Assembly (NCBI RefSeq): GCF_048593235.1
Contig: NC_133617.1
Coordinates: 13,211,607 to 13,275,606, forward strand
DNA length: 64,000 nucleotides
From: Sminthopsis crassicaudata
Taxonomy: Eukaryota
Direction of reading: 5' to 3'
Numbering within the stretch: position 1 is the first letter of the stretch; each line of letters opens with the position of its first letter. The translations under genes and the position numbers were made by a program. The notes under the pieces were generated by a model that saw nothing but the letters and a program-made list of their open reading frames with translations, was not told where the DNA came from and did not search any database. Shown here piece after piece: positions 39,701 through 63,869 of this stretch.

Positions 39701-41285
39701 AACGGGCCTCCATCCTGGTCTCCCGGAGGCTCATGGGCCCGCAGCCCTTTCTCTGGGCAACAAAGCTCCCAAAGCTCTCCCTGTGACACGGCCCCCCCCA
39801 TTATGCAGATGAGGAAACCAAGGCTCCAACGTCATCTTCTCTAAACATTTATTAAGCACCTACTATGTGCCAGGCACTGAACTAAGAGAGAGCTAAAGAG
39901 CAGAAAGTTCCCCCCTTTGCCCTTTAGGGGGAAACCAGACTCTGTCTGGGGGCTTCAGGCTCCCTTCTCTTAGATCCAGGTTGGGGGCTTGGCCAGCCTC
40001 TGGGGGGCGGCGGCTGCTAGAATGGGAAGAACATTGGGTTCGAATCCCCCCCAGCACTGGGAGATAACCTCGGAGAAACCTCTGTAAAGTGAGCTGTCCT
40101 GGGCGCCCGGGGAGCAGGAGGCCTGGGTGCCCCCTCGAGGCTCTCCCCGCTCTAAGGCCAGAATTTCAAATACTTGTGGACCTGCCTCCCCCATCTGCAC
40201 TGAGCCAAGTTCCTGCCCTTAGCCTGGCTCTGCCGAGGCCTGAGGGAAGCTACTCTGTCCCACCTCCTGGGGGAGGGAGGTCAAAAGGAGAGGGCCCAGT
40301 TGTCCTACCCTGGTCAGTGCTCACTCTGTGCCTCAGTTTCCTCTTAGGAGAACTTGGGGGGCAGTGCTTGCTTTCCCTGCTCCCTCCAGGGGCGGTCAGC
40401 CGGTCAAGTGCCCAAGAGACCCAGGGCGAGGCAAAAGCCGCCCTCGCGCGGCCTGGCCCCTGACCTCTGGTTTTCCCTGCAGGAGTCAAGATCCTCTTCC
40501 GGGTGGGCCTGGTTCTGCTGAAACACAGCCTGGGCTCCTCGGAGAAGCTGAAGACCTGCCAGGGCCAGTACGAGACCATGGAGCGGCTGCGCAGCCTGAA
40601 CCCCAAGATCATGCAGGAGACCTTCCTGGTGCAGGAGGTAAGGGGGGGGTCCTGGAGGGTGGGGAGCCAAGGGGACAGAAGGGGGCTGGGGACCAAGGAG
40701 GGTCCTGGGGGGCAGAGGGGGCTGAGGGCCTGAGGGCAGCGCCAGTCCTCCTCAGCTAGGCCTTCTGCCTCGTCTGGCCCCTGACACCAGGTGATCGAGC
40801 TGCCCGTGACCGAGCGGCAGATCGAGCGCGAGCACCTGATCCAGCTCCGGAAGTGGAAGGACACGCGGGGGGAGCTCCAGTACCAGTCGCCCCCAAGGCT
40901 GCACGGGGCGAAGGCCATCAGCGAGGCGGAGCCCGCCCCCCGAAAGGCGCTGGAGCCCTCCCCCTCCATCCGCCTGCCCCCGGGCACCCAACTGCCAGGC
41001 GCAGGCACCGAGAGCAGGCAGCAGAAACAGGCTGAGAAGGAGCATCAGAAGGCGCTGAAGGCTCAGGCCAAGCAGCAGAGGGGGCAGCAGCAGCCCCCGC
41101 CCTCGCAGGCCCTCCCAGGTCCTGGTGAGGGCCCCGCCCCAGCAGCCCCTGCCCAGGCCCCGGGCCCCAGCACTGAGCAGGTGCCCCTGGCTGCCCCGGG
41201 GCCGGAGGGTCCAGATGCCAAGGACTCACCTCATCATTCCAAGGAGAGCCTGACTTCCCAGGAGAGTGAAGACACTTACCTATAA
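12256..41285 (+). CDS. TBC1D10A: TBC1 domain family member 10A (EPI64; Rab GAP), complete, 515 aa
   Basis: join(12256-12467,32987-33086,36845-36952,37413-37519,38815-38929,39012-39077,39205-39394,40483-40637,40791-41285) = 1548 nt, all [15 protein letters not shown]...[18 protein letters not shown]; TBC motifs [13 protein letters not shown] and YCQAQAP; C-terminal PDZ ligand DTYL*. Confidence 0.97.
12606..12815. repeat. Tandem duplication, period 101 bp
   Basis: ctcactctggttctccgcactc...agctggaactcgccgcccc starts at both 12611 and 12712. Confidence 0.9.
17300..18300 (-). mobile_element. L2 LINE fragments
   Basis: Reverse tail aaaagcatttattaagcacttgctgtgtacc at about 17711 and flanking purine-rich L2-like body. 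Confidence 0.55.
20111..20260 (-). mobile_element. WSINE1-type tRNA/CORE SINE
   Basis: ctgaggctggggttaagtgacttgcccagggtcacacagctagg...ccactgcgccacctagctgtccc; degenerate 15-bp TSD agacaattctggttt (20096) / aggcaattctgtttt (20261). Confidence 0.85.
20466..20645. mobile_element. hAT/Charlie-type MITE (OC1-like), 180 bp
   Basis: TIRs CAGTGGTCCTCAAACT / AGTTTGAGAACCCCTG; 8-bp TSD-like TTCTAGAT / TTCTAGTG, fitting the Charlie NTCTAGAN target preference. Confidence 0.85.
25228..25294. repeat. Imperfect (GAGT)n microsatellite
   Basis: gtgagtgagtgagtgagtaatgagtgagtgaatg... Confidence 0.85.
32987..33086 (+). CDS. TBC1D10A: TBC1D10A exon 2 (100 nt)
   Basis: ccatag|AGTAGAG ... AAG|gtgggt; [20 protein letters not shown]...KRHKK. 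Confidence 0.95.
36845..36952 (+). CDS. TBC1D10A: TBC1D10A exon 3 (108 nt)
   Basis: cccag|ATC ... GAC|gtaagg; [24 protein letters not shown]...GKFD. Confidence 0.95.
37413..37519 (+). CDS. TBC1D10A: TBC1D10A exon 4 (107 nt)
   Basis: tttcag|GAG ... CACGG|gtaaga; [23 protein letters not shown]...GGHG. Confidence 0.95.
38815..38929 (+). CDS. TBC1D10A: TBC1D10A exon 5 (115 nt)
   Basis: ctctag|CCAACAG ... GAG|gtagcc; [11 protein letters not shown]...HMPAE. Confidence 0.93.
39012..39077 (+). CDS. TBC1D10A: TBC1D10A exon 6 (66 nt)
   Basis: ggcag|CAA ... CTG|gtgagc; [22 protein letters not shown]. Confidence 0.95.
39205..39394 (+). CDS. TBC1D10A: TBC1D10A exon 7 (190 nt)
   Basis: cacag|GAG ... 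GAAG|gtacgg; [11 protein letters not shown]...WDMFFCE. Confidence 0.95.
40483..40637 (+). CDS. TBC1D10A: TBC1D10A exon 8 (155 nt)
   Basis: ctgcag|GAGTC ... GAG|gtaagg; [15 protein letters not shown]...FLVQE. Confidence 0.95.
40791..41285 (+). CDS. TBC1D10A: TBC1D10A exon 9 coding part
   Basis: caccag|GTGATC ... TAA; [20 protein letters not shown]...[13 protein letters not shown]. Confidence 0.96.
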
Positions 41286-46791: not shown

Positions 46792-47769
46792 TAGCTGCTC
46801 CGGGTTCAGGCACTGTTCTCAAAGTCCAGTCTGGAGGCAGAACCACACAGAAACATGGGCTGGGACACAGAGAAAGGCCGAAAGGCTCGAGTTTGGATCC
46901 GGATGGACAGCGGACAGGCCCAAGGCCGGGAGCCTCCCTCTGGTCCCCGGGGGTTTCAGCGGTTTTCTCATAGCCTCCCTTACTTAGGCTGTTCTTGGCA
47001 GAAATAGCAGCGGGGTTTGCGCTTCCTTCTCCAGCTCACTTTTTTAAACAGACGAGGAACCGAAGCAATAAGGGGGATGTGGCTTGTCCAGTTCACACAG
47101 CTAGTGTCTGAGGCTGCATTTGAACTCGGGTCTCCCTGGCTCCCGGCCCAGTGCCCTATCCACTGCTCCACCCAGCTGCCCCAAAATACAGACAAATGTC
47201 TTAAGGCAAATTTCCTCCCCCCAAACCTGGTGCTCACCGCCTGGTCGCTGCTTTGAAGCAGGAGTTTGCCAATTTTGAGGGTTATGAAGTCCATTTTTCA
47301 GATGAGAAAACTGAAGGGTGGGAGCTGGTAAGGGATTTCCTGGCTTCTGGACCACACTTTCGGGGTCAGGTCTTCCACAGTCCTGCAATGGCCACGTTTC
47401 CATATGGGAGGGGGTACGGGAGAAGAGAGGCTTCCAGAGCAGGGGGTGGTCCCAGAAGCTCAGAACTGGAAGGCCCACTGGGGAGGACCCCAGGAGTCAC
47501 CCTAACCTCTCCTGAAGGGCTGCAGGTGAAACGCGCCCGGGGCCAACACCTCAGAGGCCCAGCTGAACGGATCCATGAGGATTTTTGCCAGGGAGACTCA
47601 TTCATTTACTCCTCAGTATCCGGTGCCTCCCCTTTCCCTTGGACATTCGAGCTCCCGTCAGCCTGGGCCTCCACCTCATTCCCAGCTCCTGCCCTCCACT
47701 GAAGAGGAAGGAGCATCCCATCCCGGCTGCCCCGCTGGGGGAGGGGGCTTCTTTGGCGTTTGCCACCTA

Positions 47770-48480: not shown

Positions 48481-48849
48481 CTGGTTGACTTATTTATTGG
48501 GGAAAGGGCATCTGCTCGCCCGGATGCGAGGAGGGGAGAGAGGACCAAAGATGGAGAGACTTCTCCTCTCTCCCCTCCCCCAAGGCCAGGTCCAAGGCCA
48601 GTCGGGATGCTCGGGGAGGGTGTAAATAGAGGGGGAGGGTATTTCCCAGCCTCGAGGGTCCCGCGTGCGCCTGGGCCAATGGGAGCCCGGCCTTCTAGAG
48701 CGGGGAGGGGGACCGGCGGAATGCACTTGTCCAGTCCCCTCTCCTTCCATCCACCGGGGCTGAGCGGGCCTGGGGGCGTGGCCCTGGGAAGTTTTAGCCC
48801 CTCCCCCTCCCCGACCATCCTCTCCCAGCTTTCCAGGACGCTGCGGTTC

Positions 48850-50050
48850 TTCTGGCCCAAGAAGATTTTCGGGCGCCTCTCCCTGTTCCCATGTAGCCCC
48901 CAAGGCCCGGGTCGCGTTGCGCCGTAGCGGCCGTGTGGGAACTCGAACCCAGGCCCCCGGGCGCGGGGCCGACCTCGCTTCCTGCGCTCCCCCATCTCCC
49001 CGCCATCCCCGGCCCCAGCCATGGACCACAAGATCCTTGAAGTCCAGAGGTTCCTGGAGGACGGCTCTTTTCCGGACCACTTGGTGACCGCTTCCCAGAA
49101 GCGAGAGTTCCGCAGGCGGGCCCAGAACTTCGTCCTGGAAGGTGAGGGGGGGGCGGCTGCGGATTATCCGCTCCCAGCGTCCTGGGGCTCCCGACCACCC
49201 GATCCCGGTGGGGGCTCCCTGAGGGCGCGCAGGAGCGGAGCCTGAGACTCGGAAGTCGAGCCCAGCCGGCCATGGAAGGAGAGAAAAATTGGGTGGGGGT
49301 GGGGGGCAGCAGCCGCTGGGCTGGCCTGGCTGCAAGCTAGAATGTGTGAAAGGCATCCGTGCGTAGGCGGCCTCGCCTGGAGGCAGCTCGTGAAGGCTGC
49401 GCGAGGCCCAGCGGGCTCTCTGACCCTAAAAACAGTGGGAGCCACGGCAGGTTCTAGAGGGAGGGGAACGCTCTGACTCGGGTTTTGGACTTAAGCGTGG
49501 AGGCGGCGAGGGGCCGCCTGGAGGCCCGAGGGCAGACTGGTCTCCCCGCCCCCTTCCGGAAGGGTGGCGGGCGTCTCCGCTGGCTAAAGTTCGGGCCGAA
49601 CCCCGAGGGAGCGAGCGGCGGGGCCCGCGGCCCGGCCTCGTTTCCAGCCCGAATCTCCGGAAGTGCGCGAGGCCCGGAGCTAGCGCCGGCCCGCCCCCGC
49701 CTCGGCCTGGCTGCTGGAAGTGACCTCAGCGGTCTCCTGGGCCCGCCCGCCCCGCCCCCTCCATTAACGCTGCGCCTCGGGGCGAGGGGGCGGCGCGGGC
49801 GCGTCTGGGGTGGGATCCTCGCGCCGCGCTTCCCGCGGCTCCTGGGGCCGCGGGGCCTGCGCTCCGGCCCCTCCCCCCGCCCGGGTCCCACAACTCTCCC
49901 GTGGAGGTTCCTGGAGCGCGTGTCGCCCCTCCCCCCGGGCGCGGCACCGTGGGCTGGGGGGGAGGGGGGGAGGAGCAGGCTTCTGGGGCCGGGATCCGAG
50001 GGCAGTTTGAAAGTGTCCCGACCCCGCCGTCGTTTTCTGAGTCCCCCAAG
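48850..50050 (+). promoter_or_regulatory. CpG island over the first coding exon and intron 1 of the integrase-like gene
   Basis: CpG-dense; Kozak ccagccATGG at 49021; ETS CCGGAAGT at 49657; palindromic CTTCCGGAAG at 49553; GC boxes near 49690. Confidence 0.7.
49021..49141 (+). CDS. GIN-like gene coding exon 1 (121 nt, phase 1)
   Basis: ATG ... GAAG|gtgagg; MDHKILEVQRFLEDGSFPDHLVTASQKREFRRRAQNFVLE. Confidence 0.8.
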
Positions 50051-53000
50051 CCCCCCCGGCAGCCAGCTCCGGACAGTTGTAGCTCCCTGGTTGGATGGCA
50101 GTGGGGGCTCCCGCTCTCAGTTCTTAGATCCTGGAGTGGTGGGATGGGGGGAGGGAGGGACGTGTGAGACGCACAGACGCACCCAGTGGGAGGGGCTGCT
50201 GGGATAGGCTGGCTGGGAGCCCCCTCACTTTGCCTTCATCCTCTCAGTTGCTCCACTTCTGTGTTCCAGAAAGCAGAAGAGGACCCTCCCCCCGGTCCGG
50301 CTCTTCCCCCCCTCCTCACCCCCCCTCGTCCGGCTCTACCCCCTCCCCCAGCCTGCTCCTCTCCCCGGGGCCTCGTGTCCCCCCTCCCCCTCTGCTCCCC
50401 CTCATTTTCTCCTTTTGGGACTCTCTCCTAATAGAATCACTCCAATTCCGTGCTGCTCCTTCCCTTCCAAGCTAGCCTCCCCCCCATGGGGACTATGGGA
50501 GAAAATCCCTCTCCGCAGGCCGGGAGGGGGGCACTCGGGGCCTGAGTTTTCCCTCTCCGCCGCACTGTAACCGCACCCAAGTTGTTGTGAAGATGGAGCC
50601 GGTACCCTAGGCTGGGAGAAGGCCTTTGGGGGTGCCAGTCCCCCATCCATGTGTCCCCTGGCCGAGGCCGGACCCTCCAGAGGGGGAGCGGCCCCCTCCT
50701 CCTCCCTCCCTCTGCTCTGAGGGTGAGATAAGAATTAAACAGCAGGCCTGGGCGGGCCCAGCATTTCCCCGTCCAAGGAAACTGAGGCTCAGAGAGGTGG
50801 GGAAGGGGCTTGGCTAAGTCCCAGGGTTTACATCCAGGGTCCCTGACTCCAAACCAGCCCCACTCCCGTTCCCTCCCCCTCCTCTCGGTCCCGGCCCTCA
50901 CCTGCTCCCTGGATGCTGGATCTGCCCTGATTACTCGGCCTTCTTCCCATGTCTCCTCCCTGGCAGCCACAAGCTCCCAGGAAAACTCCAGCCTGCCCCA
51001 TTAATCTCCATTCTGGCCGTCTGGCTTTCTGGTCTACCACTCGATTGCTCCCCGTGTGTTTATTGAATTAAGTTAAATTAATATACATTAATAAATAGTG
51101 AATAACTAATTAATATTAAGTTAAGTACAATCTCTGCCTATATCCCTCGCTGAAGGGACTCTACAGAGGGGGGGGGGCAAAGTCCCATGTCCAGGAGTAA
51201 CATAACCCACAGAGGCTGGAATGGAGCTCCCCATCCCTCTCCCCTCTGACTGATGGCAGCTAGGGGGCGCCATACTGCGTGGAGCCCAGGATTGGGAATC
51301 AAAACCTACTCTGATCAATCAGACATTTAGGGACCCAGCCCAGGAGGTCACTTCACTCTCTTTGCCTCCGTGTTCTCATCTGTAAAATGGGCGGAAGAAG
51401 GAATTGTAAATCCAGTCCAGTGTCTTTGTCAGAAACACTCTCCCCGATCTAACGATTTTGCTCGATTCCCGGGACTGGTTTCCCGTAGAACTGAGGGCTC
51501 CCGTGGCGGGAGGTACAGAGCGACCCGGAGACCTAGAGGAACCTTTCAGAGCAGTTAGCATAAGCAAAGTCGCGCTAACGACTGTCCGAGGTGACGTCGG
51601 ACAGGGGCCGTGTTCGGACTCTCGGCTCCACAGCCGGCTTTCTCTCTTTCTTTCTTTCTTTTTTTAAAGCTTTTTATTTTCAAAACATGGGCAGATGATT
51701 TTTCAGCTGCCCTTGCAGAGCTGCATGCCCCTAGTTTTCCCCTCCTTCCCCCACCCCCTCCCCCGGATGGCAGGTAGTCCCATACGTCCAGCACGTGTTA
51801 CCCATTTAGGCAGTTATCTTGTCCAGTATTCTTCCCAGCACACCGGGGTGGGGCCATTAGGCACCCCTTTGCCTGCATGGATGGGGGAGCTCACCCTGGC
51901 TGCCTCCCCCTCAGACTGGGCTCTCCTTCCCCAGGGGAGGGTCTGGAATTGTTCCCTGGGGGGGTTCCTTCCCCAGGGGAGGGTCTGAGTCACCCTTTTG
52001 GGGAGGGTTTCCCCCCAGGGGAGGAGGGTTGGGGTCAGTGTCTTGGGGGGAGGGGCTCCTTCAGTAACCAAGGCATCTCCTCTGCAGACCACAACCTGAT
52101 GTTCGTCCGTCTGGGCAAGAAGTCTCTGGTGGTGCTGGACCGGAAGGACCGCCTGGAGCTGGTGAAGCAGGCGCACGTCACCTCCTCCGGCCTGCATTGC
52201 TCCCTGCAGGAAACCAGGAAGAAGGTCTCCTTCAGCTACTACTGGCCCAGCCTGGACCGAGATGTCAGCAAGTGGGTCAGTGGAGGAGGGTCCCGGGCGG
52301 GGCAGGGGGCGGCTCCCGGAAAGGAGAGACCCCGAGAACCTCGGACTCCTGCGCGCTTGTCTTCCTGCAGGAAGCCTCAGTTTACTCATCTCTAGAATGG
52401 GAGGCGTTAAGTCTTTCACTCATTCTCTGCTTTTCTGCGCTCATCTCTGCCTGGAGAGCCTCTTGGCCAGTGAGCTTTCCCTTGTGGGAACAGGAACAAA
52501 ATCCAGGCGGGATCCTCCTCCCTGCTGGGCCCGTACTTGGTCATTATTATTCCTCGGGGGTCGCTCCCCGTTCTGCCCATTAGCTGTGCACTCCCTCCTT
52601 TCCCAGGGTTGGGAAAATTGAATGAGATCATACTTGTTAAAAGGACTTATTGCCACAATGTCCAGCACACAGTAGGCACTTAATAAATGCTTACTCCCTT
52701 CCGTTATAATCGTTGCAAATGCAGCTTCCGGTTCTCTTTCCTTCCTTCACATAAGTCTACCTGAGATTCTTCTCGAGCCTTTGCTCACTACTTTTTGTGA
52801 TTTGCTCAGCCAGTCCCCAGACCACGGGCACCTGGCTTTGTTTCCAGGCTTCCCCAGGTCAGCTCTGAATGTTTTGGTATAAATGGGGTCTTTTTTGACT
52901 TCTAGGGGTTCATACAAACAATTTTTTACAGAAGGGGAAAACTGAGGTTCAGGAGAAGAGACTTGTTCAAACTCGGCATCACTGGGGGTCTAGGGAGGGA

Positions 53001-56000
53001 GCTTCTCCATCCCTCCACACTGCTTCATGGGGGCTTCCTCCTTGGGCCCATCTCAGGGATTGAGGGTGAGGTGGGTGGGGGCAGACCTTAGGGCGTTCTC
53101 TTGGAGGCTCTTCGCCCTTTTTTGTGCCTGGTAAAGATCCCAGCGGGTCCCGGCTGCTTGGGATCCCAGCGTGGCAACCCCCACAGTCTCACCCCTCTCG
53201 CCACAGGTCAAGCAGTGTAACTGCCGCCAGAAGGCGTGTTCAGAGAAGTCTCTGCCCATCCAGGTAACGGTCCCAGGGGGGCGGGGGACAGGAAGGCAGG
53301 GCGGCCCCGCTGCCACGGTGGGCTTCTGGCTGGCTGGTCCTCCTGGACTCCCCCCAAAGAAAGAGAGAATCTTGATCTTGGGGACAGAATCTGAGCTTGA
53401 CGGTCTTGCTCCGTGGGACCTTGGCCAGATCCCTTGTCCATTCCCCAAATGAGAGGCGGCGGGTGGGCCCTAACCCTAAGAGACGGTAGCTGGATGTCTT
53501 GCCCCCTGGGGATCCTGCCCTGAGGGGTCTGGGATGGATGGGCACATGGACGGTCCTCTTCTCCACAGGGGGTCAGCAGCAAGAGCCAGCGCGCTAGGGA
53601 CCCGTTGCCCGTGCTCCAAGTGGAAGCGGTAAGTAGGTGGGGACGGGGAGGAGAGGCGAGAAGGACCCGGCTCTGAGCCGGGCACGCCACAGATAGTGTC
53701 TCCTTTGGGCTCCTCAGCACCCTGGGAGGGGATCTGTCACGATCCCCATTTTAGTTAAGGAACATTGCACAACTAGTGAGTGTCGGAGTCTGCATTTGAA
53801 CTTGGGTGGCCTTGGTTCCAGGGCTAGTGCTCGATCAGCCAGTGGCTCAGGCTCTGCCCTTATACAGCGTGAGCCCGGAGACCTGCCTCCTACCCTTTCC
53901 CAGAGGGGCTTTGGAACACTCGGGCCTGGGGAAGTGCATGGGAGCCGCTGTCGGCCATCTTCCCCTCCTCGCTCCCCCGTCCCGGTCCAGGATTTTAGGC
54001 CCTCTGGGTGACTTTTTATAAGTCTCCCGACCTCTTCCCCTCAGGTCACTCAGGCTTTTGAGCAGGTGGGCCTGGGCCTGGTGGGGCCCCTGATGGAGAC
54101 TGCCAACGGCTTCCGCTTCATCCTTTTGTCCGTGGACGCTTACTCCCGGTGGGTCGAAGCCTCACCACTAAAGGAACAAAATCCCGTGGAAGTGGCCAGC
54201 GCCCTGATCCCCTTCCTCCTCCGATTTGGACGTCCCCAGCTCCTGGTCACCACTCTTCGAGTTCCATTTGTGAGCCAGGTGAGTCAGCTATCCGCCCCCC
54301 CCTCCCATCCAGAGCAGGCTGGGTTCTCCCCCTTGTAATCTAGAACAGGATCCCCACCCCCTTCTAGAATTGGAGTTCTGCCCCCTCCCTGCTCTAGAAC
54401 AGAAAGGCTAGGCTGAGGGAGGGGGGGCCAGGCTGAGGGAGGGGGGCCAGGCTGAGGGGGGGGGCTAGGCTGAGAGAAGGAGGCCAGGCTAAGCGGGGGG
54501 GGGGGGGGGGGGTAGGGCTGAGCTCCTCCTGTTCTTGCCTTCTGAAACTCACGTGGTTCCCCCACAGTGCCCCTGGGGTCAGCCTCAGATCATTTCCCTT
54601 CCTGCCCCCTTAAGCCCTCTAGTCTCCATGGCTCCCCACACCCTCCCCTGCAACCCGCCATCTCTCCTTCCACGGCCACCTTTCCAGACCCTCAAGGCTC
54701 CTTTTCAGTGACCCCTGTCCCCTGCAGGTGAACCGGAGTCTCCATCGCCAGCTCCAGGGCTTGGGGGTGCCCCTTGGCAAGCTGGACATCATCGTGTCGG
54801 CGTTCCAGCCGAAGATCAATAGCATCGTGTCCCTGACCGCCAGCTCTGTTAGGAGGTGAGGACGGGCCGGCCCCGGTCTCTGGTCTCACCGGACCTGCTG
54901 CCCACAGAGAAGCCGGGGAGAGCGAGGAAGAGAGCTGGTCCTTATCAGCTCTGGGGGAACCCAATCCCAAGTGGTAGAGCTGGATTGGAACCCAGACCCC
55001 CTTATGGTTAGAGGGGCTAGGGGTGGAGAAAAAGGGAGAATCTGAGAAAACGGGGGTGGCGAGGTGATGGCCGAGGCTGAGCTTGACAAAACCTGTCCTG
55101 GGCTTCGGGGTGTGGCGCGGGATGGCACTCAGGGGGATTGGCACGGTCGGGTGAGAAGAGCCCTGCACTGGGGACCAGAAGGCTGAAGTTAAAATCCTAA
55201 TCCTGCCCTCCACTGGCTGGGAGAAGAAGCATAGAAATCCCTTCGGATGCCTCAGTTTCTTTATCTGTAAAATGGGTAGGGGAGGGGGCTGTTACTGAGC
55301 TGAAGGTATCCTGACTTGGGATGATTTAGGAAATTGAGGATGTGGTGGGGGAGAGGGTCCGTTCCCGCGGCCCTAACTAAGAGAGCTCCTGGCTGCTTTC
55401 AGGGCCCTGTGGAGCCTGGTGAAGGGGGAGCTGGAGAAGTGGGACCAGGTCTTGGACAGAGCCCTTTTCTCCCTGAGGACGGCCGTGACTAAGAACAAGA
55501 GGAAAAGTCCCTTCCAGTTACTTTATGGTCGCAAGCCCAGGGCCCCTCAGGACGTTCCCTCCTATTTTGACGTGAGTGCTGGGCTCCTGGCTCCTCGGCG
55601 CATTCTACGCTGCAGGCCGCCTCTCCTGGCTGGGTCTCCCGGGTCCCGCTGCGCCGAGAGCTGCTTCCTCTCCTTGACCGCTGGTTCTCTCGCCTGCCGT
55701 TAGCCTTTCCTTCTCCTGACCCTGACCCCCAACTCTGGGGCCCCTCCAAAAGGATTCACACCCAGAGCATTAGGATTTGAGCATCTGGGACCCAGAGCAG
55801 GTTACTTGAGACCCACGCCACCCAAATGCCCTTTGTGGGCCGGGGGCAGCAGCCTGGCCTGGGTTCTCATCTCCTCGTGCCTTGGCTTGAGCCAGCTCCC
55901 TTCGGTCAGCTCCCATTCATAAGTATGAGGAGGGGGCTCCCTGCCCTGGCCTTTCTCCTTCCTTTACTTTGCAGCATTTTCTGGAGTTCAGATAAACATG

Positions 56001-57281
56001 GAGGGTTAGCAGGAGGGGCATTGGGCCGGAGCTTAGAATACCTGGGTTCCCGAAGGATTCTCTGTAGAACTGGTGGCCAGTGACTATCTATAGTTACCAT
56101 GACCCCCTCCCCTCTGTGACCTTCTCTCCTCCGTGTACCTCCAGGTGGTTGCAGCAGACACCGTGGGGGACAGTGCAGGGGCTACCCATGGTGATAAAAG
56201 GCCCATGGGTGCAGCATCTGCACCAAAAGCCGTGGGGCAGCAACCGAAGCGACAGATCATCCGAGAGCCCACTCTACAGGTCATGGCGAAGCCCGGTGTG
56301 AAGCCGGTCCAGCAGCCCGTGCCAGAGCCCATCCAGCAGCCCGTGCCAGAGCCCATCCAGCAGACCGTGCCGGAGCCCGCCCAGCAGCCTTTAATGAAGT
56401 CCATCCAGCAGCCCATGCCGGAGCCCGTGTTGGAGCCCTCTCAGCAGCCCTTAATGGAGCCTGCCCAGCAGCCCTTAATGGAGTCCATCCAGCAGCCCAT
56501 GCCAGAGCTCACCCAGCAGCCCATGCCGGAGCTCACCCAGCAACCCATGCCGGAGCTCGTCCTGCAGCCCGTGCCGGAGTCCTCCCAGCAGTTTGTGTTG
56601 GAGCCCTCCCAGCAGCCCATGCTGGAGCCCTCTCAGCAGTTCGTGTTGGAGCCCTCCCAGCAGTCCATATCAGAATCCAGACAACCATCCAGGCCAGAGA
56701 CCATGGGGCAGTTCATGCATCAGCTCATACCAGAGCCCATGAATCAGCATATGTGGCAGCCCATGCTGGGGGCCATCAACCAATCTATGCAGCCCATCCA
56801 GCAGCTCATGCAGCAGACCATGCAACAGTCCATGATCCAGTCTCTCCAGCAGCCCATGCATCAGCCCATTCAGCAGCTCATACTTCAGCCCATGCAGCAG
56901 CCCATGATGGAGTCCATCCAGCAACCCCTGCAGCAGCCCCTGCACCAGTCTATGCAGCAGCCCATGCTGCAATCCATGCAGCAGCCTATCCAGCAGGCCA
57001 TGCCCCAGCCCATCCAGCAGCCCATGCAGCAGGCCATGCCCCCACCCATCCAACGGCCCATACCCCAGTCTGTGCCGTGGCCCATGGCCCAGCCTATCCA
57101 GCAGCCCCTGCAGCAGCTCATCCTGGCAAAACCTATGCATCCACCCATCCCCAGGCTGGCAGAATGTCCTGTGGTGAGCGGCTGGGACCAACGGACAACT
57201 CCCAGCCTCGACAACCCCTGGGAAAAGTGGGAGCCTGGTGGAGGAGCCTTCTGGACTCAATGGAGGGAGCCTGGCAACTAG
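49021..57281 (+). CDS. Domesticated GIN/Ginger (Gypsy-integrase-like) gene with dead DDE core and Q/P/M-rich repeat tail, 677 aa
   Basis: join(49021-49141,52088-52275,53207-53263,54045-54278,54728-54855,55403-55571,56145-57281) = 2034 nt, six GT-AG introns with matching phases and no internal stop. Integrase hallmarks: H-x6-H...YYWPSLDRDVSKWVKQC; GPL..T.NG.RFILLSVDAYSRWVEASPL; RFGRPQ; WDQVLDRALFSLRT...SPFQLLYGRKPR. Confidence 0.88.
52088..52275 (+). CDS. GIN-like gene coding exon 2 (188 nt; HH half of the Zn finger)
   Basis: ctgcag|ACCAC ... TGG|gtcagt; DHNLMFVRLGKKSLVVLDRKDRLELVKQAHVTSSGLHCSLQETRKKVSFSYYWPSLDRDVSKW. Confidence 0.88.
53207..53263 (+). CDS. GIN-like gene coding exon 3 (57 nt; CC half of the Zn finger)
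   Basis: ccacag|GTCAAG ... CAG|gtaacg; VKQCNCRQKACSEKSLPIQ. Confidence 0.8.
54045..54278 (+). CDS. GIN-like gene coding exon 4 (234 nt; core N-half)
   Basis: ccctcag|GTCACT ... CAG|gtgagt; VTQAFEQVGLGLVGPLMETANGFRFILLSVDAYSRWVEASPL...PFVSQ. Confidence 0.9.
54728..54855 (+). CDS. GIN-like gene coding exon 5 (128 nt, phase 2)
   Basis: ctgcag|GTGAAC ... AGGAG|gtgagg; VNRSLHRQLQGLG...VSAFQPKINSIVSLTASSVR. Confidence 0.82.
55403..55571 (+). CDS. GIN-like gene coding exon 6 (169 nt)
   Basis: ctttcag|GGCCCTG ... GAC|gtgagt; ALWSLVKGELEKWDQVLDRALFSLRTAVTKNKRKSPFQLLYGRKPRAPQDVPSYFD. Confidence 0.9.
56145..57281 (+). CDS. GIN-like gene terminal exon (378 aa; QQP[MVL]xE / QQPM repeats)
   Basis: Pyrimidine tract plus ctccag|GTGGTT, in phase 0 with exon 6; 1137 nt open to TAG (ORF track 56133-57281). 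Confidence 0.8.
   Translation: MVAADTVGDSAGATHGDKRPMGAASAPKAVGQQPKRQIIREPTLQVMAKPGVKPVQQPVPEPIQQPVPEPIQQTVPEPAQQPLMKSIQQPMPEPVLEPSQQPLMEPAQQPLMESIQQPMPELTQQPMPELTQQPMPELVLQPVPESSQQFVLEPSQQPMLEPSQQFVLEPSQQSISESRQPSRPETMGQFMHQLIPEPMNQHMWQPMLGAINQSMQPIQQLMQQTMQQSMIQSLQQPMHQPIQQLILQPMQQPMMESIQQPLQQPLHQSMQQPMLQSMQQPIQQAMPQPIQQPMQQAMPPPIQRPIPQSVPWPMAQPIQQPLQQLILAKPMHPPIPRLAECPVVSGWDQRTTPSLDNPWEKWEPGGGAFWTQWREPGN
56304..57122 (+). repeat. Coding tandem repeat, 24-nt then 12-nt units (CAGCAGCCCATG core)
   Basis: ccagcagccc(a/g)tgcc(a/g)gagc repeated; unit lengths are multiples of 3. Confidence 0.9.
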
Positions 57282-57689: not shown

Positions 57690-58290
57690 GACAGATAGAC
57701 GGGGGTTCCCAAAAGTCTTAGTGCAGCTTTAACCTATTACAACTTTTTAAGATTTTTGGGACACTCTGAAGAAAATTGATTGATAAGAGGGTGGTTGGAT
57801 GTAGCAGGGAAGGAAGAAAGTGAGAGTCGAGACTTCTGGGAAAACAACGCGTGTGAAGTAAAGGGTTTTCTAGGCAGGGTCAAAGACTGTTATGTGGACC
57901 TGGGGCGCTGGGTATGTCCGGACCAACAAGAAAACGAGTTTGGGGCTGGAAAGGTGGTTAGATCCAAGTTGAGGTAATGGGGAGCTGTGGAAGTTGCTGG
58001 AGTAATAGCAGCTACTCAGATCAATAAATAATTGGGAGGAGGAAAGCTCTCCTATGGGAGATGGTACCTAGGGCAAGTCTTGAAAAGGTGGGAGTGAATT
58101 TGGAAGTTCTAAGCAGGCTAGGTAGGGCCTGTGCAAAGACTGCAGCAAGCATCCAATTCGGGGAGAAGTACGGAGCCAGTTGTTTGGCTGGAAGAGAGGG
58201 TTTGGGCAAAGGATGCAAAAAGGGGAAAGAGGGGGTGAGTTGCAGAGAGCAGCAGAGACCTAGTCCATCACTGCTGATTATCACATGATC
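57690..58290 (-). mobile_element. L2 ORF2 relic
   Basis: Purine-rich + strand typical of antisense L2; degenerate - strand ORF at 58021-58302. Confidence 0.45.
58023..58028 (+). terminator. Candidate poly(A) signal for the GIN-like gene
   Basis: First AATAAA I found downstream of the 57281 stop; lies in repeat-like sequence. Confidence 0.3.
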
Positions 58291-60779: not shown

Positions 60780-61720
60780 GCGGGGGAGGGCGGGGCCCAG
60801 AGAGCCGAGGGGGCGGGCCCGCGGATCCCGGATCCAGGCGGCGGGGCGAGCGGAGCCGGGGCCCGGACGGGGCCGTTCGCGGGGTTCGAGGGAGCCAGCG
60901 CGGGAGCCCCCGGCCGCGCCGTCTGCGGCCCGAATCTCCCCAGCCTGGGCGTGGCCGGTCCAACGAGCCCAGAGCGACCCCCGCGGGACCCCTGCGCGCC
61001 CCTGCAGGCTCCCGGCCGGCCTCCCAGGGTTCCCGGACGTCGCTTTGCGTGGCTGGAACCCGGGCACCCGGTACACGCGTGGGGCCCGCCTCCTCCCCCC
61101 TAGCCTCTCCCCCCCCCATTCCAGAAGGGCCAGCCAGCGGGGGCGTGGCCCGGAGAGTGTGGCTCGAGGATTGGCTGGCCCCGAGGGTTCTGAGGGGGCG
61201 GGGCCAGTGCCGGGGAGTTTCAGGGGGCGTGGCGTGGGCCCGGGCGCTCCGAGGGGGCGGGCCGGGAGCTCCTGCAGCCGCCGCCGTCGCCGCCGCCGCA
61301 GCCGGAGGAGGAGGATCCGGGGCCTGGCGCTGGCTGGGCGGCTGTGGGGCCCGGCAGCAGCAGCCGCCGCCGCCTCGGCGGCCCCTCGCTCCTCCTCCTC
61401 CTCCTCCTCGGAGCGGCCTCCTCCCTGCCCGGGCCTCGGGCTCGGCGCGCCCATGGAGCTGCACATCCTGGAGCACCGGGTCCGGGTGCTGAGCATCGCG
61501 CGCCCCGGACTCTGGCTCTACACGCACCCGCTTGTCAAGCTGCTCTTCCTGCGGCAGCGGAGCCGGTAAGGCGAAGGCCGGGGGCGCGGGGGCCTGCCCG
61601 CCCCCGGGCCCCTCCCTGCCGGGGCTGGGGGGGGGGCAGAGAAGCCCGTCCCCCCGCCCTCCAGCCCTCTGTCTCCGCTGCTCCCCGAGCCCGCTCCGCA
61701 CCCCGGATCATCCCCACTTT
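60780..61720 (+). promoter_or_regulatory. CpG-island promoter of CASTOR1
   Basis: CpG-dense; ATTGG at 61170; several GGGGCGG/GGGGCGTGG boxes at 61140-61263; GCC-repeat 5' UTR; Kozak gcccATGG. Confidence 0.85.
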
Positions 61721-62418
61721 CCAGAAGGGGCCACTGAGATTCCGGGAGGTTGTAACGACTTGCCCAGAGACGCCCAGAAAGTGAACGGGGGCCTCGCGCT
61801 CCCCTCCCCCAGCTTGCTGGGGCTTGCCCCGCTCCGAGACTGCTATATTAACGGGGAGGTGTCGCCGCCCTCCGCTTTCTAGCCGCCCTGGCCCAGCCCG
61901 AGCCGTGACTCCCCCCCCCCCCCCCAACCTCAGTTGCCTCTTTGGAACACGAGCCCTTCCGATCCCGCGGGAGCTTGGAGCCGCAGCTCTCTGTGGGTCA
62001 GTGGGTCAGAGGGCCGGTACCAGCAGGGGTCACCCGAGCCAGCTCCGGGAGAATGCTGGGGAGGTGGCTCCTTCCTCCCAGCGAGGAGGAAAGGACTGGG
62101 CTGGGTGGCTGCTTCCCCAAGCTGGGATTCTGGGAAGGCTCAGGATCACCTGCACCCATCTTCCCCTTCCTCCTCCTCCCTCCCCACGGGCCGAGGCTCC
62201 GGGAGACCTAATTTGTTCTGCTTGACTGCAGCCTGAGCAAAGTCCACTGGCTCCTTAAGTCTGGCTCATCCTCCCCTCCCCCCCCCCCCCCGGACTTTGG
62301 GATGGGGGGATGAGGCTTTGGCTCATGGAGGGGTCCCCTCTCCCCAGGTGCAAGTTTTTCAGCCTGACAGAAACCCCAGAAGATTACACCCTAATGCTGG
62401 ATGAAGAAGGATATAAAG
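61453..62418 (+). CDS. CASTOR1: Cytosolic arginine sensor for mTORC1 subunit 1 (GATSL3), exons 1-2; remainder beyond the window
   Basis: join(61453-61565,62348-62418): MELHILEHRVRVLSIARPGLWLYTHPLVKLLFLRQRSR|CKFFSLTETPEDYTLMLDEEGYK; donors gtaagg and gtactg; synteny with TBC1D10A and SF3A1. Confidence 0.96.
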
Positions 62419-63325: not shown

Positions 63326-63504
63326 TTTTTTTTTTTTTTTAATTTTTTAAATTTATTTATTTATTTTTTTCCTGAGGCTGGGGTTAAGTGACTTGCCCAG
63401 GGTCACACAGCTAGGAAGTGTTAAGTGTCTGAGACCAGATTTGAACTCGGGTCCTCCTGAATTCAGGACTGGTGCTCTATCCACTGCTCCACCTAGCTGC
63501 CCCC
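63326..63504 (-). mobile_element. Young WSINE1-type SINE with poly(A) tail and perfect TSD
   Basis: T-rich tail at 63326-63370, body to 63504, flanked by AAAGTTGGC(TTTTT) at 63317 and 63505. Confidence 0.92.
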
Positions 63505-63869
63505 AAAGTTGGCTTTTTTTTGGGGGGGGGTAGAGAGACAGCTAGTGACTGATGTTGGATTTGAATTCAGCTCTTCCTTATTCTTTATCTTGAAATCTCA
63601 TTTAATACACGTTTAGCAGAGTTATTTCAAAAAGTGGGACTAACAGCCATGAGAATGTATCACCTCTGTGGGTACTTCCATCGGTAGTGTAAGTCAGCTT
63701 CGATACTGTTGCCCTTTTTCCTCCGTTGGCTTTACCCGGTCATGGACAATTTCGCTCTTTGATACTGTTGCCCTTGTTGGCTTTACCTGGTCATGGACAT
63801 TGACGTTCTTGACAATTACTGTAAGAATGATTATAGCTGATTTTTTCTTAGTCTGATGTTTGCCTTGCT

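What the first reader, a model, noticed from the sequence alone, without database searches (positions are those of the whole stretch)
49021..57281. Intact 7-exon domesticated GIN/Ginger integrase-derived gene between TBC1D10A and CASTOR1
Seen: seven exons scattered over 8.3 kb, none obvious alone in the ORF track, splice at canonical sites into one 677-aa frame with a strong Kozak ATG inside a CpG island. Residues 1-299 carry Gypsy/Ginger integrase signatures (N-terminal FLEDGSFP...KREFRRRAQNF, HHCC-type finger, YYWP...DV..WV..C, core, WD..L..ALFSLRT..SPFQLLYGR.PR). I see no LTRs, gag/RT/RNase H or TIRs. Knowledge, from memory: human TBC1D10A and CASTOR1 are only a few kb apart with no such gene; GIN1 lies next to PPIP5K2/PAM; GIN2 is reported as lost in eutherians and, as I recall, lies near OGFOD2/ABCB9. 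Inference: this is either a relocated GIN2 or a third, possibly undescribed, domesticated GIN/Ginger gene retained in marsupials.
Basis: partly seen in the sequence, partly recalled or inferred. Interest (0 to 1): 0.93.

Follow-up and report, generated by a model that had tools for sequence, protein, structure and literature searches.

The report
Marsupial gene from tamed transposon integrase
Between TBC1D10A and CASTOR1, marsupials carry an intact, strongly conserved gene descended from a Ginger/GIN transposon integrase that has lost its catalytic residues; it is neither GIN1 nor GIN2, and databases list it only as an uncharacterised protein.

Summary
The gene is real, but it has eight coding exons (697 aa), not seven. 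The corrected model is identical to NCBI's "uncharacterized protein LOC141557864" of Sminthopsis crassicaudata. Orthologues exist in six marsupials, including Monodelphis. Three checked loci show CASTOR1 just downstream, and one also shows a RabGAP-TBC gene upstream.

The N-terminal 319 residues fold as an integrase zinc-finger plus catalytic-core domain (pLDDT 87.8; best PDB matches PFV and Ty3 integrases). All three DDE residues are replaced (G153, T212, S255). dN/dS is 0.08-0.19 for this part and 0.37-0.48 for the Gln/Pro-repeat tail, which ends in an invariant Trp-rich motif. I found no terminal or long terminal repeats and no second copy.

It lacks the published Gin-1 and Gin-2 signatures, is about 29% identical to a Gin-2-type protein, and lies away from the reported GIN2 locus. 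Its intron positions and phases match other Ginger1-type genes. A linker insertion carrying an extra intron is shared only with a second marsupial integrase gene that has a PHD finger.

It is best read as a third, undescribed, non-catalytic GIN-type domesticated gene. Its function is inferred, not shown.

The parts
48500..50250 (.). CpG island spanning the start codon and exon 1; presumed promoter
   Evidence: GC 0.66-0.78 and CpG observed/expected 0.61-0.83 in 500-nt windows, falling to about 0.3 after 50250
49021..49141 (+). Coding exon 1 (residues 1-40 plus one base; intron phase 1); N-terminal helices of the Ginger1-type integrase
   Evidence: ATG in GCCATGG context with a GT donor. The amino-acid sequence is identical in Sarcophilus at L001:6543-6663.
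52088..52275 (+). Coding exon 2; carries H70, H77 and the YYWP motif of the HHCC zinc-binding domain
   Evidence: AG/GT splice sites; Pfam Integrase_H2C2 E 1.9e-9 on this exon alone
53207..53263 (+). Coding exon 3; carries C107 and C109 of the zinc finger and the start of the linker
   Evidence: AG/GT splice sites. C107 is conserved in 110 of 112 homologues. The usual second Cys column is R110, with the Cys shifted to position 109.
53569..53628 (+).
   Evidence: AG/GT splice sites, in frame. Present in all annotated orthologues and needed for identity with P0006.
54045..54278 (+). Coding exon 5; first half of the RNase H-like core, with G153 and T212 in place of the two catalytic Asp residues
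   Evidence: The 234-nt exon size is conserved in all compared Ginger1-type genes. Column frequencies are D 101/112 and D 95/112.
54728..54855 (+). Coding exon 6; carries S255 in place of the catalytic Glu
   Evidence: AG/GT splice sites, intron phase 2, shared with the other groups. The column is E in 96 of 112 sequences.
55403..55571 (+). Coding exon 7; last core helices and the GPY/F-type motif (SPFQLLYGR)
   Evidence: AG/GT splice sites. The 169-nt exon size is shared with the fish gene. W276, P299 and G305 are conserved.
56145..57281 (+). Coding exon 8 with the stop codon; 378-residue Gln/Pro-rich tail
   Evidence: AG acceptor, TAG at 57279-57281. dN/dS 0.37-0.48.
56290..57121 (+). Tandem 12- and 24-nt repeats inside exon 8, encoding QQPM/EPxQQPMP-type units; length varies between species
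   Evidence: Tandem Repeats Finder periods 12, 24, 48 and 72. Orthologues range from 597 to 697 aa through gaps in this region.
57123..57278 (+). Conserved C-terminal 52 residues, ending in the invariant motif PWEKWEPGGG.FWTQWR.PGN
   Evidence: Near-invariant in five species, including Monodelphis. dN/dS 0.15-0.26.
58023..58028 (+). Candidate polyadenylation signal AATAAA
   Evidence: Pattern match. Alignment with the Petaurus and Notamacropus loci stops at about 58050-58063.
40785..41282 (+). Upstream neighbour: last coding exon of TBC1D10A
   Evidence: Aligns at 82-88% with the end of the RabGAP-TBC gene of locus L003. The frame ends in ...DTYL.
61453..62417 (+). Downstream neighbour: CASTOR1 exons 1 (61453-61566) and 2 (62349-62417)
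   Evidence: Pfam Castor1_N E 2.1e-8 and 4e-13. The orthologous loci L001-L003 have CASTOR1 in the same position.

Best explanation
This is a single-copy host gene that arose by domestication of a Ginger1/GIN-type DNA-transposon transposase (a Gypsy-like integrase). It was fixed before the split of American and Australasian marsupials.

Shown here: the gene keeps the transposase's N-terminal helical region, its HHCC-type zinc-binding domain, its RNase H-like core fold and its GPY/F motif. All three catalytic residues are replaced (D to G153, D to T212, E to S255). It has a roughly 380-residue glutamine/proline repeat tail that ends in an invariant tryptophan-rich peptide.

Inferred from loss of the triad, not tested: it can no longer cut or join DNA.

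Inferred mechanism: it works as a non-catalytic nucleic-acid or chromatin-binding adaptor. The zinc finger and the dead core, which is the most constrained part, would bind DNA, RNA or a fixed partner and possibly multimerise as integrases do. The low-complexity tail and the C-terminal Trp motif would recruit other proteins.

Evolutionary reading: it is distinct from GIN1 and GIN2. Its closest relative is probably a second marsupial dead-integrase gene that carries a PHD finger.
For: Gene model and identity:
- Eight GT-AG exons give a 697-aa product identical to database protein P0006.

Orthologues and synteny:
- Orthologues are found in Sminthopsis, Sarcophilus, Antechinus, Petaurus, Notamacropus and Monodelphis, with 81-97% identity over the integrase part.
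- CASTOR1 lies downstream in Sarcophilus, Petaurus and Notamacropus, and a RabGAP-TBC gene lies upstream in Notamacropus.

Selection:
- dN/dS is 0.08-0.19 over residues 1-319, with a bootstrap upper bound of 0.27 in the three pairs tested.
- The C-terminal 52 codons give 0.15-0.26.

Fold and residues:
- The AlphaFold model has pLDDT 87.8 and pTM 0.77.
- The best PDB matches are PFV integrase (E 6e-15) and Ty3 integrase (E 2.5e-10). Core-only target TM-scores are 0.65-0.78.
- The DDE columns are D, D and E in 101, 95 and 96 of 112 homologues, but G, T and S here. G153 and T212 are invariant in all marsupial orthologues; position 255 is S in four and A in Monodelphis.

Not a mobile element:
- No inverted repeats and no flanking direct repeats occur within 44-61 kb.
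- tblastn finds only this locus in the window.

Relationship to Ginger1-type genes:
- Intron positions and phases are shared with fish, turtle and marsupial Ginger1-type genes.

Not GIN1 or GIN2:
- The signature motifs of the published Gin-1/Gin-2 alignment are absent.
- Identity to the Gin-2-type protein P0132 is 29%.
- The locus differs from OGFOD2-ABCB9.
- In an exhaustive HMMER search of 1.84 billion representatives, scores fall from at least 345 bits for marsupials to 123 bits for the next hit.
Against: - No expression, splicing or protein data could be examined. Support for the gene model rests on cross-species conservation and on agreement with database gene predictions.
- The functional mechanism is wholly inferred. 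No binding target is known, and the tail has no database match.
- The full-length structure prediction failed (pLDDT 31.6), so disorder of the tail is not shown.
- The fourth zinc ligand is shifted by one position (C109 instead of the usual column 110), so zinc binding is plausible but untested.
- The phylogenetic position is unresolved because of a long stem branch of about 1.3 changes per site. A sister relation to the Gin-2-type protein is not rejected (AU p = 0.092).
- Full-length canonical GIN1 and GIN2 proteins could not be put into the tree. Only a 248-aa Gin-2-type fragment of unknown species was available.
- Absence outside marsupials rests on annotated proteomes, not on genome searches.
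Confidence: 0.68

Rival explanations
1. It is an old paralogue of GIN2 (or of the GIN1/GIN2 ancestor) made by gene duplication, not a separate domestication event. It then diverged very fast on the marsupial stem before becoming constrained.
For: - It has the same number of coding exons (eight) as reported for GIN2.
- Intron positions are shared across the family.
- The AU test does not reject a clade of this gene plus the Gin-2-type protein P0132 (p = 0.092, log-likelihood difference 14.8).
- The long stem branch of 1.3 changes per site is compatible with a burst of divergence.
Against: - The free tree places P0132 inside the Ginger1-like clade, away from this gene.
- Identity to P0132 (29%) is no higher than to transposon-like fish and frog genes (31-32%).
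- The roughly 15-residue linker insertion with its extra intron is absent from the Gin-1, Gin-2 and Hydra Ginger1 sequences of the published alignment. It is present only in this gene and the marsupial PHD-finger gene.
- Ginger1 transposons themselves carry the conserved introns (PMC2836005), so shared introns do not require gene duplication.
Confidence: 0.2
2. It is the true marsupial orthologue of GIN2, moved to a new locus.
For: GIN2 is reported in marsupials but lost in eutherians and monotremes, which resembles the apparent distribution of this gene. Both have eight coding exons.
Against: - GIN2 is reported between OGFOD2 and ABCB9 in marsupials, whereas this gene lies next to CASTOR1 in four species.
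- The lizard, fish, chicken and frog Gin-2 sequences in the published alignment share long identical motifs that this gene lacks, such as YYWLGIVKDV, HLGQKKT and DFCEEV.
- A separate Gin-2-type protein, P0132, exists in the databases. It has V where the other Gin-2 sequences have the shifted Asp, which fits the published remark about opossum GIN2.
Confidence: 0.04
3. It is a decaying transposon or retroelement fossil, or a pseudogene, whose open frame survives by chance or by annotation artefact.
For: The DDE triad is lost. The tail is repetitive and variable in length. Several database models are truncated or misnamed.
Against: - The frame is open in all six species across roughly 80 million years (my estimate for the marsupial crown age).
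- dN/dS is 0.08-0.19, with dS up to 0.73.
- All seven introns keep canonical splice sites in the four species with DNA in hand: the window, Sarcophilus (after adding the unannotated exon 1), Petaurus and Notamacropus.
- Residues 133-260 are almost invariant.
- A CpG island lies at the start.
Confidence: 0.03
4. It is a live or recently active Ginger1 transposon copy.
For: Its closest non-marsupial matches include fish and frog genes with an intact DDE triad. Their tree does not follow the species tree, which suggests they are mobile.
Against: - There are no terminal inverted repeats.
- The window holds a single copy, and each database orthologue was found on one contig.
- The position is orthologous in four species.
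- The catalytic residues are gone.
Confidence: 0.01

Closest known systems
GIN2 (Gypsy integrase 2; Gin-2 of Bao et al. 2010, Marin 2010, Chalopin et al. 2012)
   Same: - Both are vertebrate host genes derived from a Ginger1/GIN transposase.
- Both have an HHCC finger plus an integrase core plus a GPY/F motif.
- Both have multi-exon structures with eight coding exons, and GIN2's DDE triad is also degenerate.
- GIN2 is reported as present in marsupials and absent from eutherians.
   Different: - The locus differs: TBC1D10A-CASTOR1 here, against OGFOD2-ABCB9 for GIN2.
- Identity to a Gin-2-type protein is only 29%, and the conserved Gin-2 motifs are absent.
- This gene has a 15-residue linker insertion with an extra intron.
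- All three DDE residues are lost.
- I saw no counterpart of the 380-residue Gln/Pro repeat tail and Trp-rich C-terminus in any relative examined. Full-length GIN2 was not available to compare.
- No orthologue was found outside marsupials.
GIN1 (gypsy retrotransposon integrase-like protein 1)
   Same: It comes from the same transposon superfamily, has the same domain order, and is a single-copy host gene in amniotes including opossum.
   Different: - The opossum Gin-1 sequence in the published alignment is clearly a different protein: the Gin-1 motifs YYKRTG, YYWTS and HHGISRT are absent here.
- GIN1 is reported to keep the catalytic residues, whereas this gene has none.
Second marsupial dead-integrase gene with a PHD finger (Sarcophilus LOC111721521, Macrotis LOC141518634, Antechinus LOC127540579, Vombatus A0A4X2KYB7)
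   Same: - It is marsupial-only in the databases searched.
- It shares the intron positions, including the extra phase-0 intron, and the linker insertion.
- It shares the D-to-T change at the second catalytic site.
- The two group together in the trees, and the AU test is fully compatible with that grouping (p = 0.435).
   Different: - Identity is only 29%.
- It sits on a different chromosome, beside a small TNFR-type gene.
- It has a C-terminal acidic stretch and a PHD finger instead of the Gln/Pro tail.
- It evolves much faster: devil and wombat are 40% identical, against about 85% between dasyurid and diprotodont orthologues of this gene.
Ginger1 / GIN DNA transposons, and the intron-bearing fish and frog Ginger1-type genes
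   Same: They are the best non-marsupial matches (31-32% identity from residue 1). They share an N-terminal region, five to six intron positions and phases, and the exact 234-nt core exon.
   Different: Those genes keep the DDE triad and match Pfam rve. They occur at varied loci or in adjacent copies. This gene is fixed, single-copy and catalytically dead.
Other domesticated integrases (KRBA2, SCAND3/ZBED9, NYNRIN)
   Same: They illustrate the same general principle: an integrase fold reused by the host and joined to a new effector region.
   Different: According to the literature they derive from Ginger2/Tdd elements or from retroviruses (PMC3575427, PMC3670739). None appeared among the close hits, and no direct comparison was made here.

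Membership tests
GIN2 orthologue | Lies between OGFOD2 and ABCB9 (reported for marsupials, birds, reptiles and fish) | tested here: not met
   The gene lies between TBC1D10A and CASTOR1 in the window. CASTOR1 also lies just downstream in Sarcophilus, Petaurus and Notamacropus, with a RabGAP-TBC gene upstream in Notamacropus. The GIN2 locus statement comes from PMC3424704.
GIN2 orthologue | High similarity to vertebrate Gin-2 proteins, including their shared motifs | tested here: not met
   The Gin-2 motifs of the published alignment are absent from this protein. Identity to the Gin-2-type protein P0132 is 29% over 225 residues.
GIN2 orthologue | Groups with Gin-2 in a phylogeny | tested here: inconclusive
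   The free ML tree separates the two, but the AU test does not reject holding them together (p = 0.092). Only a 248-aa Gin-2-type fragment was available.
GIN2 orthologue | Eight coding exons | tested here: met
   The gene has eight coding exons. The positions of the GIN2 introns could not be compared, so this feature is not diagnostic.
GIN1 orthologue | Similarity to amniote Gin-1, including opossum Gin-1 | tested here: not met
   The Gin-1 motifs are absent. The opossum Gin-1 sequence in the published alignment differs throughout.
GIN1 orthologue | Catalytic DDE residues retained (reported for mammalian GIN1) | tested here: not met
   The three positions are G153, T212 and S255.
Domesticated Ginger1/GIN-type integrase gene (the kind) | Integrase zinc-binding domain plus RNase H-like core fold | tested here: met
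   Pfam Integrase_H2C2 E 2.1e-11. AlphaFold model pLDDT 87.8; Foldseek matches PFV integrase at E 6e-15 and Ty3 integrase at E 2.5e-10.
Domesticated Ginger1/GIN-type integrase gene (the kind) | Intron positions and phases shared with Ginger1-type genes | tested here: met
   Five to six shared positions with identical phases, and identical 234-nt exons, in fish, turtle and marsupial relatives. Positions in GIN1 and GIN2 themselves could not be mapped.
Domesticated Ginger1/GIN-type integrase gene (the kind) | Immobile: single copy, orthologous position, no terminal repeats | tested here: met
Domesticated Ginger1/GIN-type integrase gene (the kind) | Purifying selection on the coding sequence | tested here: met
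   dN/dS is 0.08-0.19 for the integrase part and 0.37-0.48 for the tail. Bootstrap intervals, computed for three of the six pairs, all lie below 1.
Domesticated Ginger1/GIN-type integrase gene (the kind) | Transcribed and spliced as predicted | not testable with these tools
   No RNA-seq or EST resource was available. The only indirect support is that independent database gene models in several species use the same exons.
Active Ginger1 transposon | Terminal inverted repeats, multiple copies and an intact DDE triad | tested here: not met
   No inverted repeats of at least 25 nt in 44-61 kb, one copy, and the triad is lost.
Gypsy/Ty3 LTR retrotransposon remnant | LTRs and neighbouring gag, protease, RT and RNase H sequences | tested here: not met
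   There are no flanking direct repeats. The introns are at Ginger1-type positions. In the trees the gene falls outside the clade that holds the polyprotein integrases, which has 93 SH-aLRT support in the quick tree and 91/88 and 96/85 in the careful trees. Gag, protease, RT and RNase H homology was not searched for directly.

The most novel reading that the evidence does not exclude
Marsupials carry a lineage-restricted pair of paralogous, catalytically dead Ginger1-derived integrase genes. One is this gene, with a Gln/Pro low-complexity tail. The other is the PHD-finger gene beside a TNFR gene. On this reading they stem from a third, independent domestication of a Ginger1 transposon in vertebrates, separate from GIN1 and GIN2 and missed by earlier surveys, which counted only GIN1/2, SCAND3, KRBA2 and NYNRIN as integrase-derived genes in marsupials. 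The window gene, under the stronger constraint, would serve a marsupial-specific chromatin or nucleic-acid-binding function.
Probability: 0.45. Interest if true: 0.72.

Novelty: new member of a known kind. Interest (0 to 1): 0.6.

Why it matters
Domesticated transposase and integrase genes are a recurring source of new vertebrate genes. The marsupial set has been described as very small: ten retroelement-derived genes in the 2013 survey (PMC3670739). This locus adds at least one strongly constrained gene, and with its PHD-finger relative probably two, that published surveys of GIN genes do not list and that databases label only as uncharacterised or under a wrong name.

The gene shows that an integrase fold can remain under tight selection for roughly 80 million years after losing every catalytic residue. 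That makes it a clean case for asking what a dead integrase core does for its host.

Gene editing has been reported in Monodelphis, and Sminthopsis is being developed as a laboratory model (from my own knowledge, not checked here). If so, the question is directly testable.

Tried and rejected
- Word-indexed protein searches. The first search, with the exon-8 frame, found four marsupial orthologues and one weak unnamed hit. The second, with residues 1-325 of the Petaurus orthologue, added Sminthopsis, Antechinus and a few Gypsy polyproteins. The third, with a 16-sequence profile, returned only seven hits and no named GIN1 or GIN2. As a result, full-length canonical GIN1 and GIN2 could not be fetched.
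- Published Gin-1/Gin-2 alignment. I read it but used it only through short motifs.
- Exact-sequence look-ups. These failed for Monodelphis P0004, Antechinus P0007, Paramormyrops P0019 and the Gin-2-type protein P0132. Consequently the opossum locus, and the species and locus of P0132, remain unknown.
- Flanks of the PHD-finger gene in Sarcophilus. These showed no neighbours within 10 kb. The Macrotis and Antechinus loci showed a TNFR-type gene, not OGFOD2 or ABCB9.
- Full-length AlphaFold run on a five-sequence alignment. It gave pLDDT 31.6 and is uninformative.
- Pfam on the tail, the C-terminal motif and the N-terminal 60 residues. Nothing was found. The weak Cornifin and other matches to the tail are compositional.
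- Rfam and tRNA scans of the window were empty.
- Fish and frog group as GIN2. I considered this and rejected it: those genes lack the Gin-2 motifs, keep the DDE triad, and their tree does not follow the species tree.
- The Sarcophilus database name ("probable inactive serine/threonine-protein kinase") was rejected as an artefact of the Gln-rich tail.

Full report
**The observation**

Each has an AG acceptor and a GT donor, and together they give an open frame of 677 codons from ATG 49021 to TAG 57279-57281. The start codon sits in a GCCATGG context inside a CpG island at about 48.5-50.25 kb. Exon 2 on its own matches Pfam Integrase_H2C2 above the curated cut-off (E 1.9e-9).

The window encodes these at 53569-53628, a 60-nt in-frame exon with AG/GT borders. 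The true gene therefore has eight coding exons and a 697-aa product. That product is identical over its full length to P0006, NCBI's [quoted passage not shown]. The window therefore comes from the fat-tailed dunnart, and a public pipeline has predicted the same model independently.

**Neighbourhood**

- The window aligns collinearly with the Sarcophilus locus at about 74-84% nucleotide identity over most long blocks.
- CASTOR1 follows the gene on the same strand in Sarcophilus, Petaurus and Notamacropus. A 506-aa RabGAP-TBC gene precedes it in Notamacropus.
- In the window, CASTOR1 exons 1 and 2 match Pfam Castor1_N (E 2.1e-8 and 4e-13).
- The last TBC1D10A exon ends at 41282, and the last SF3A1 exon ends at 4275.
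- The order is SF3A1, TBC1D10A, the integrase gene, then CASTOR1, all on the + strand.

**Is it a gene, a fossil or a transposon?**

Orthologues with open frames exist in Sminthopsis, Sarcophilus, Antechinus, Petaurus, Notamacropus and Monodelphis. Identity over the integrase part is 81-97%, and residues 133-260 are almost invariant. The Sarcophilus database model lacks exon 1, but that exon is intact in the DNA (L001:6543-6663).

I mapped the coding sequences onto four loci and calculated Nei-Gojobori dN/dS.

| Region | dN/dS | Note |
|---|---|---|
| Residues 1-319 | 0.08-0.19 | dS 0.15-0.73; bootstrap upper bound 0.27 (three pairs) |
| Exon-8 tail | 0.37-0.48 | repeat alignment is uncertain |
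| Last 52 codons | 0.15-0.26 | conserved C-terminal motif |

There are no inverted repeats of 25 nt or more, and no flanking long direct repeats, within 44-61 kb. tblastn finds only this locus in the window. These results exclude a pseudogene, a retroelement fossil and a live transposon.

**What the protein is**

An AlphaFold model of residues 1-325, built on a 112-sequence alignment, is confident (pLDDT 87.8, pTM 0.77). Its best PDB matches are full-length prototype foamy virus integrase (E 6e-15) and Ty3 integrase (E 2.5e-10). Core-only chains give target TM-scores of 0.65-0.78. A profile search of PDB sequences finds the same two families weakly.

In the 112-sequence alignment the three catalytic columns are D (101/112), D (95/112) and E (96/112). 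This protein has G153, T212 and S255. G153 and T212 are fixed across the marsupial orthologues, while position 255 is S in four and A in Monodelphis. H70, H77 and C107 of the HHCC finger are kept. The fourth ligand column is R110, with a conserved Cys one position earlier at 109. The GPY/F-type motif is present.

Exon 8 encodes about 380 residues of Gln/Pro-rich 4- and 8-residue repeats (12- and 24-nt periods, 56290-57121). Their number differs between species, giving products of 597-697 aa. The repeats surround a conserved island and end in a near-invariant tail, PWEKWEPGGG.FWTQWR.PGN. The tail matches no Pfam family.

**Relationship to known families**

An exhaustive HMMER search with a marsupial profile against 1.84 billion representatives scored marsupial proteins at 345 bits or more. 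The next hit scored only 123 bits. No annotated orthologue exists outside marsupials in that library.

The nearest non-marsupial proteins are intron-bearing Ginger1-type genes of fishes and a frog. They are 31-32% identical, aligned from residue 1, have an intact DDE triad and match Pfam rve. Their tree does not follow the species tree, so they look transposon-like.

A second marsupial family surfaced: Sarcophilus LOC111721521, Macrotis LOC141518634, Antechinus LOC127540579 and a Vombatus protein. It is 29% identical to the window protein, has lost both catalytic Asp residues (the Glu is kept in wombat only), and carries a C-terminal PHD finger. It lies beside a small TNFR-type gene on another chromosome.

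Mapping exons onto DNA gave three findings:
- All these groups share intron positions and phases.
- All share the exact 234-nt core exon.
- The window gene and the PHD-finger gene alone share an additional phase-0 intron, lying within an insertion of about 15 residues in the linker between finger and core (57+60 nt against 60+63 nt, where the fish and turtle genes have one 72-nt exon).

The published Gin-1/Gin-2/Ginger1 alignment (Additional file 3 of PMC2836005) shows a 20-residue linker in Gin-1, Gin-2 and most Hydra Ginger1 elements. The insertion is therefore a derived character that joins the two marsupial genes. They also share the D-to-T change at the second catalytic site.

**GIN1 and GIN2 specifically**

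[quoted passage not shown] An earlier paper found no Gin-2 in mammals (PMC2836005). A 2013 survey lists only GIN1/2, SCAND3, KRBA2 and NYNRIN as integrase-derived genes in marsupials (PMC3670739).

In the published alignment the Gin-2 sequences of lizard, fish, chicken and frog share long identical motifs. Neither these nor the Gin-1 motifs occur in the window protein or in its two relative groups. Only one retrieved protein, the 248-aa fragment P0132, is of Gin-2 type. It has V where other Gin-2 proteins have the shifted Asp, which fits the published remark about opossum GIN2, but its species could not be established. The window protein is 29% identical to it.

**Phylogeny**

The ML trees give the window gene a long stem branch (about 1.3 changes per site) and very short crown branches.

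| Result | Support or test value |
|---|---|
| Grouping with the PHD-finger gene and a Lingula protein | 96/95 |
| Same grouping after adding P0132 | 50/95 |
| AU test, window gene + PHD-finger gene as one clade | p = 0.435 (compatible) |
| AU test, window gene + Gin-2-type protein | p = 0.092 (not rejected) |
| AU test, window gene + fish/frog group | p = 0.053 (borderline) |

P0132 itself falls inside the Ginger1-like clade. Sequence phylogeny alone therefore does not fix the position. The locus, the motif content and the linker-intron character all argue that this is not GIN1 or GIN2.

**Mechanism**

Shown:
- The protein has an integrase fold.
- The catalytic triad is lost.
- The dead core is under very strong constraint.
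- The tail is a variable repeat that ends in a conserved C-terminal motif.

Inferred:
- The protein cannot catalyse strand transfer.
- It acts as a binding or scaffolding module for nucleic acid or chromatin.
- Its Gln/Pro tail and Trp-rich end serve as protein-interaction elements.

I hold the identity (a domesticated, non-catalytic host gene) at about 0.9 and the specific mechanism at roughly 0.35. The overall figure given is a compromise between the two.

**Novelty**

No paper in the searchable library describes a GIN-type gene at this locus or a third GIN gene. That library is incomplete. The gene is already predicted in public annotations as uncharacterised, and in Sarcophilus it carries a wrong name. 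I classify it as a new member of a known kind.

**Limits**

- No expression data could be examined.
- No genome searches outside annotated proteomes were possible.
- Full-length canonical GIN1 and GIN2 are not in the tree.
- The Monodelphis locus was not seen.
- The full-length structure prediction failed.

Noticed in passing
L004:10001-16070 (Sarcophilus), L007:10001-25224 (Macrotis), L008:10001-13150 (Antechinus): A second marsupial-only integrase-derived gene family that has lost both catalytic Asp residues and carries a C-terminal acidic stretch and a PHD finger. It lies beside a small TNFR_c6-domain gene. It shares the extra linker intron and the D-to-T change with the window gene, but evolves much faster (devil and wombat are 40% identical). 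I found no description of it in the papers searched.
   Followed up: partly
L001:6543-6663 and L001:9990-10000: The Sarcophilus orthologue is annotated without exon 1 and the start of exon 2, and is named [quoted passage not shown]. Exon 1 is intact in the DNA, and the name is an artefact of the Gln-rich tail.
   Followed up: yes
window 51877-52087 (42-nt tandem repeat at 51924-52024): The reading frame of exon 2 stays open upstream of its acceptor, through a Gly/Pro-rich 42-nt tandem repeat, back to an ATG at 51877. Antechinus isoform X2 uses a comparable, much expanded repeat as an alternative N-terminus. This could be an alternative first exon or an annotation artefact.
   Followed up: no
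window 4078-4275: The last coding exon of SF3A1 (ubiquitin-like domain end, ...LALKERGGRKK) lies here, so the window spans SF3A1, TBC1D10A, the integrase gene and CASTOR1, all on the + strand. This is the order I recall for human 22q12.2, apart from the extra gene.
   Followed up: partly
L005:10001-16830 (Paramormyrops); L006:1794-14564 (Mauremys); proteins P0178, P0183, P0130: Fish, frog and turtle Ginger1-type genes with introns and an intact DDE triad. Their tree does not follow the species tree (the frog nests among the fishes). The Bombina copy is fused by annotation to PPCDC. Mauremys has two adjacent copies. These are probably mobile or recently mobile elements rather than GIN2.
   Followed up: partly
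protein P0132 (no locus available): A 248-aa Gin-2-type protein fragment with the canonical Gin-2 motifs. It has V in place of the shifted Asp, which matches the published remark about opossum GIN2. Its species and locus could not be determined.
   Followed up: partly
window 63702-63809; L001:21528-22689: A unit of about 105 nt in the first CASTOR1 intron occurs about once in the dunnart window but as roughly twenty tandem copies in Sarcophilus.
   Followed up: no
window 47103-47160, 53779-53836 and 44816-44840; also 20111-20260, 43475-43578, 46980-47186 and 63379-63508: Short interspersed repeat fragments recur in the intergenic region and in introns of the gene, and also at several places in the Petaurus and Notamacropus loci. 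They are probably SINE or MIR-type elements and do not flank the gene as terminal repeats.
   Followed up: no
window 53216-53227 (residues 107-110); P0003 residues 107-110: The second Cys pair of the zinc finger reads C-x-C-R in most orthologues, rather than the usual C-x-x-C. The wallaby has C-x-C-C, keeping both candidate ligands.
   Followed up: no
window 58023-58028: An AATAAA lies 742 nt after the stop codon, and cross-marsupial sequence conservation ends about 25-35 nt beyond it. This is the likely 3' end of the transcript.
   Followed up: partly
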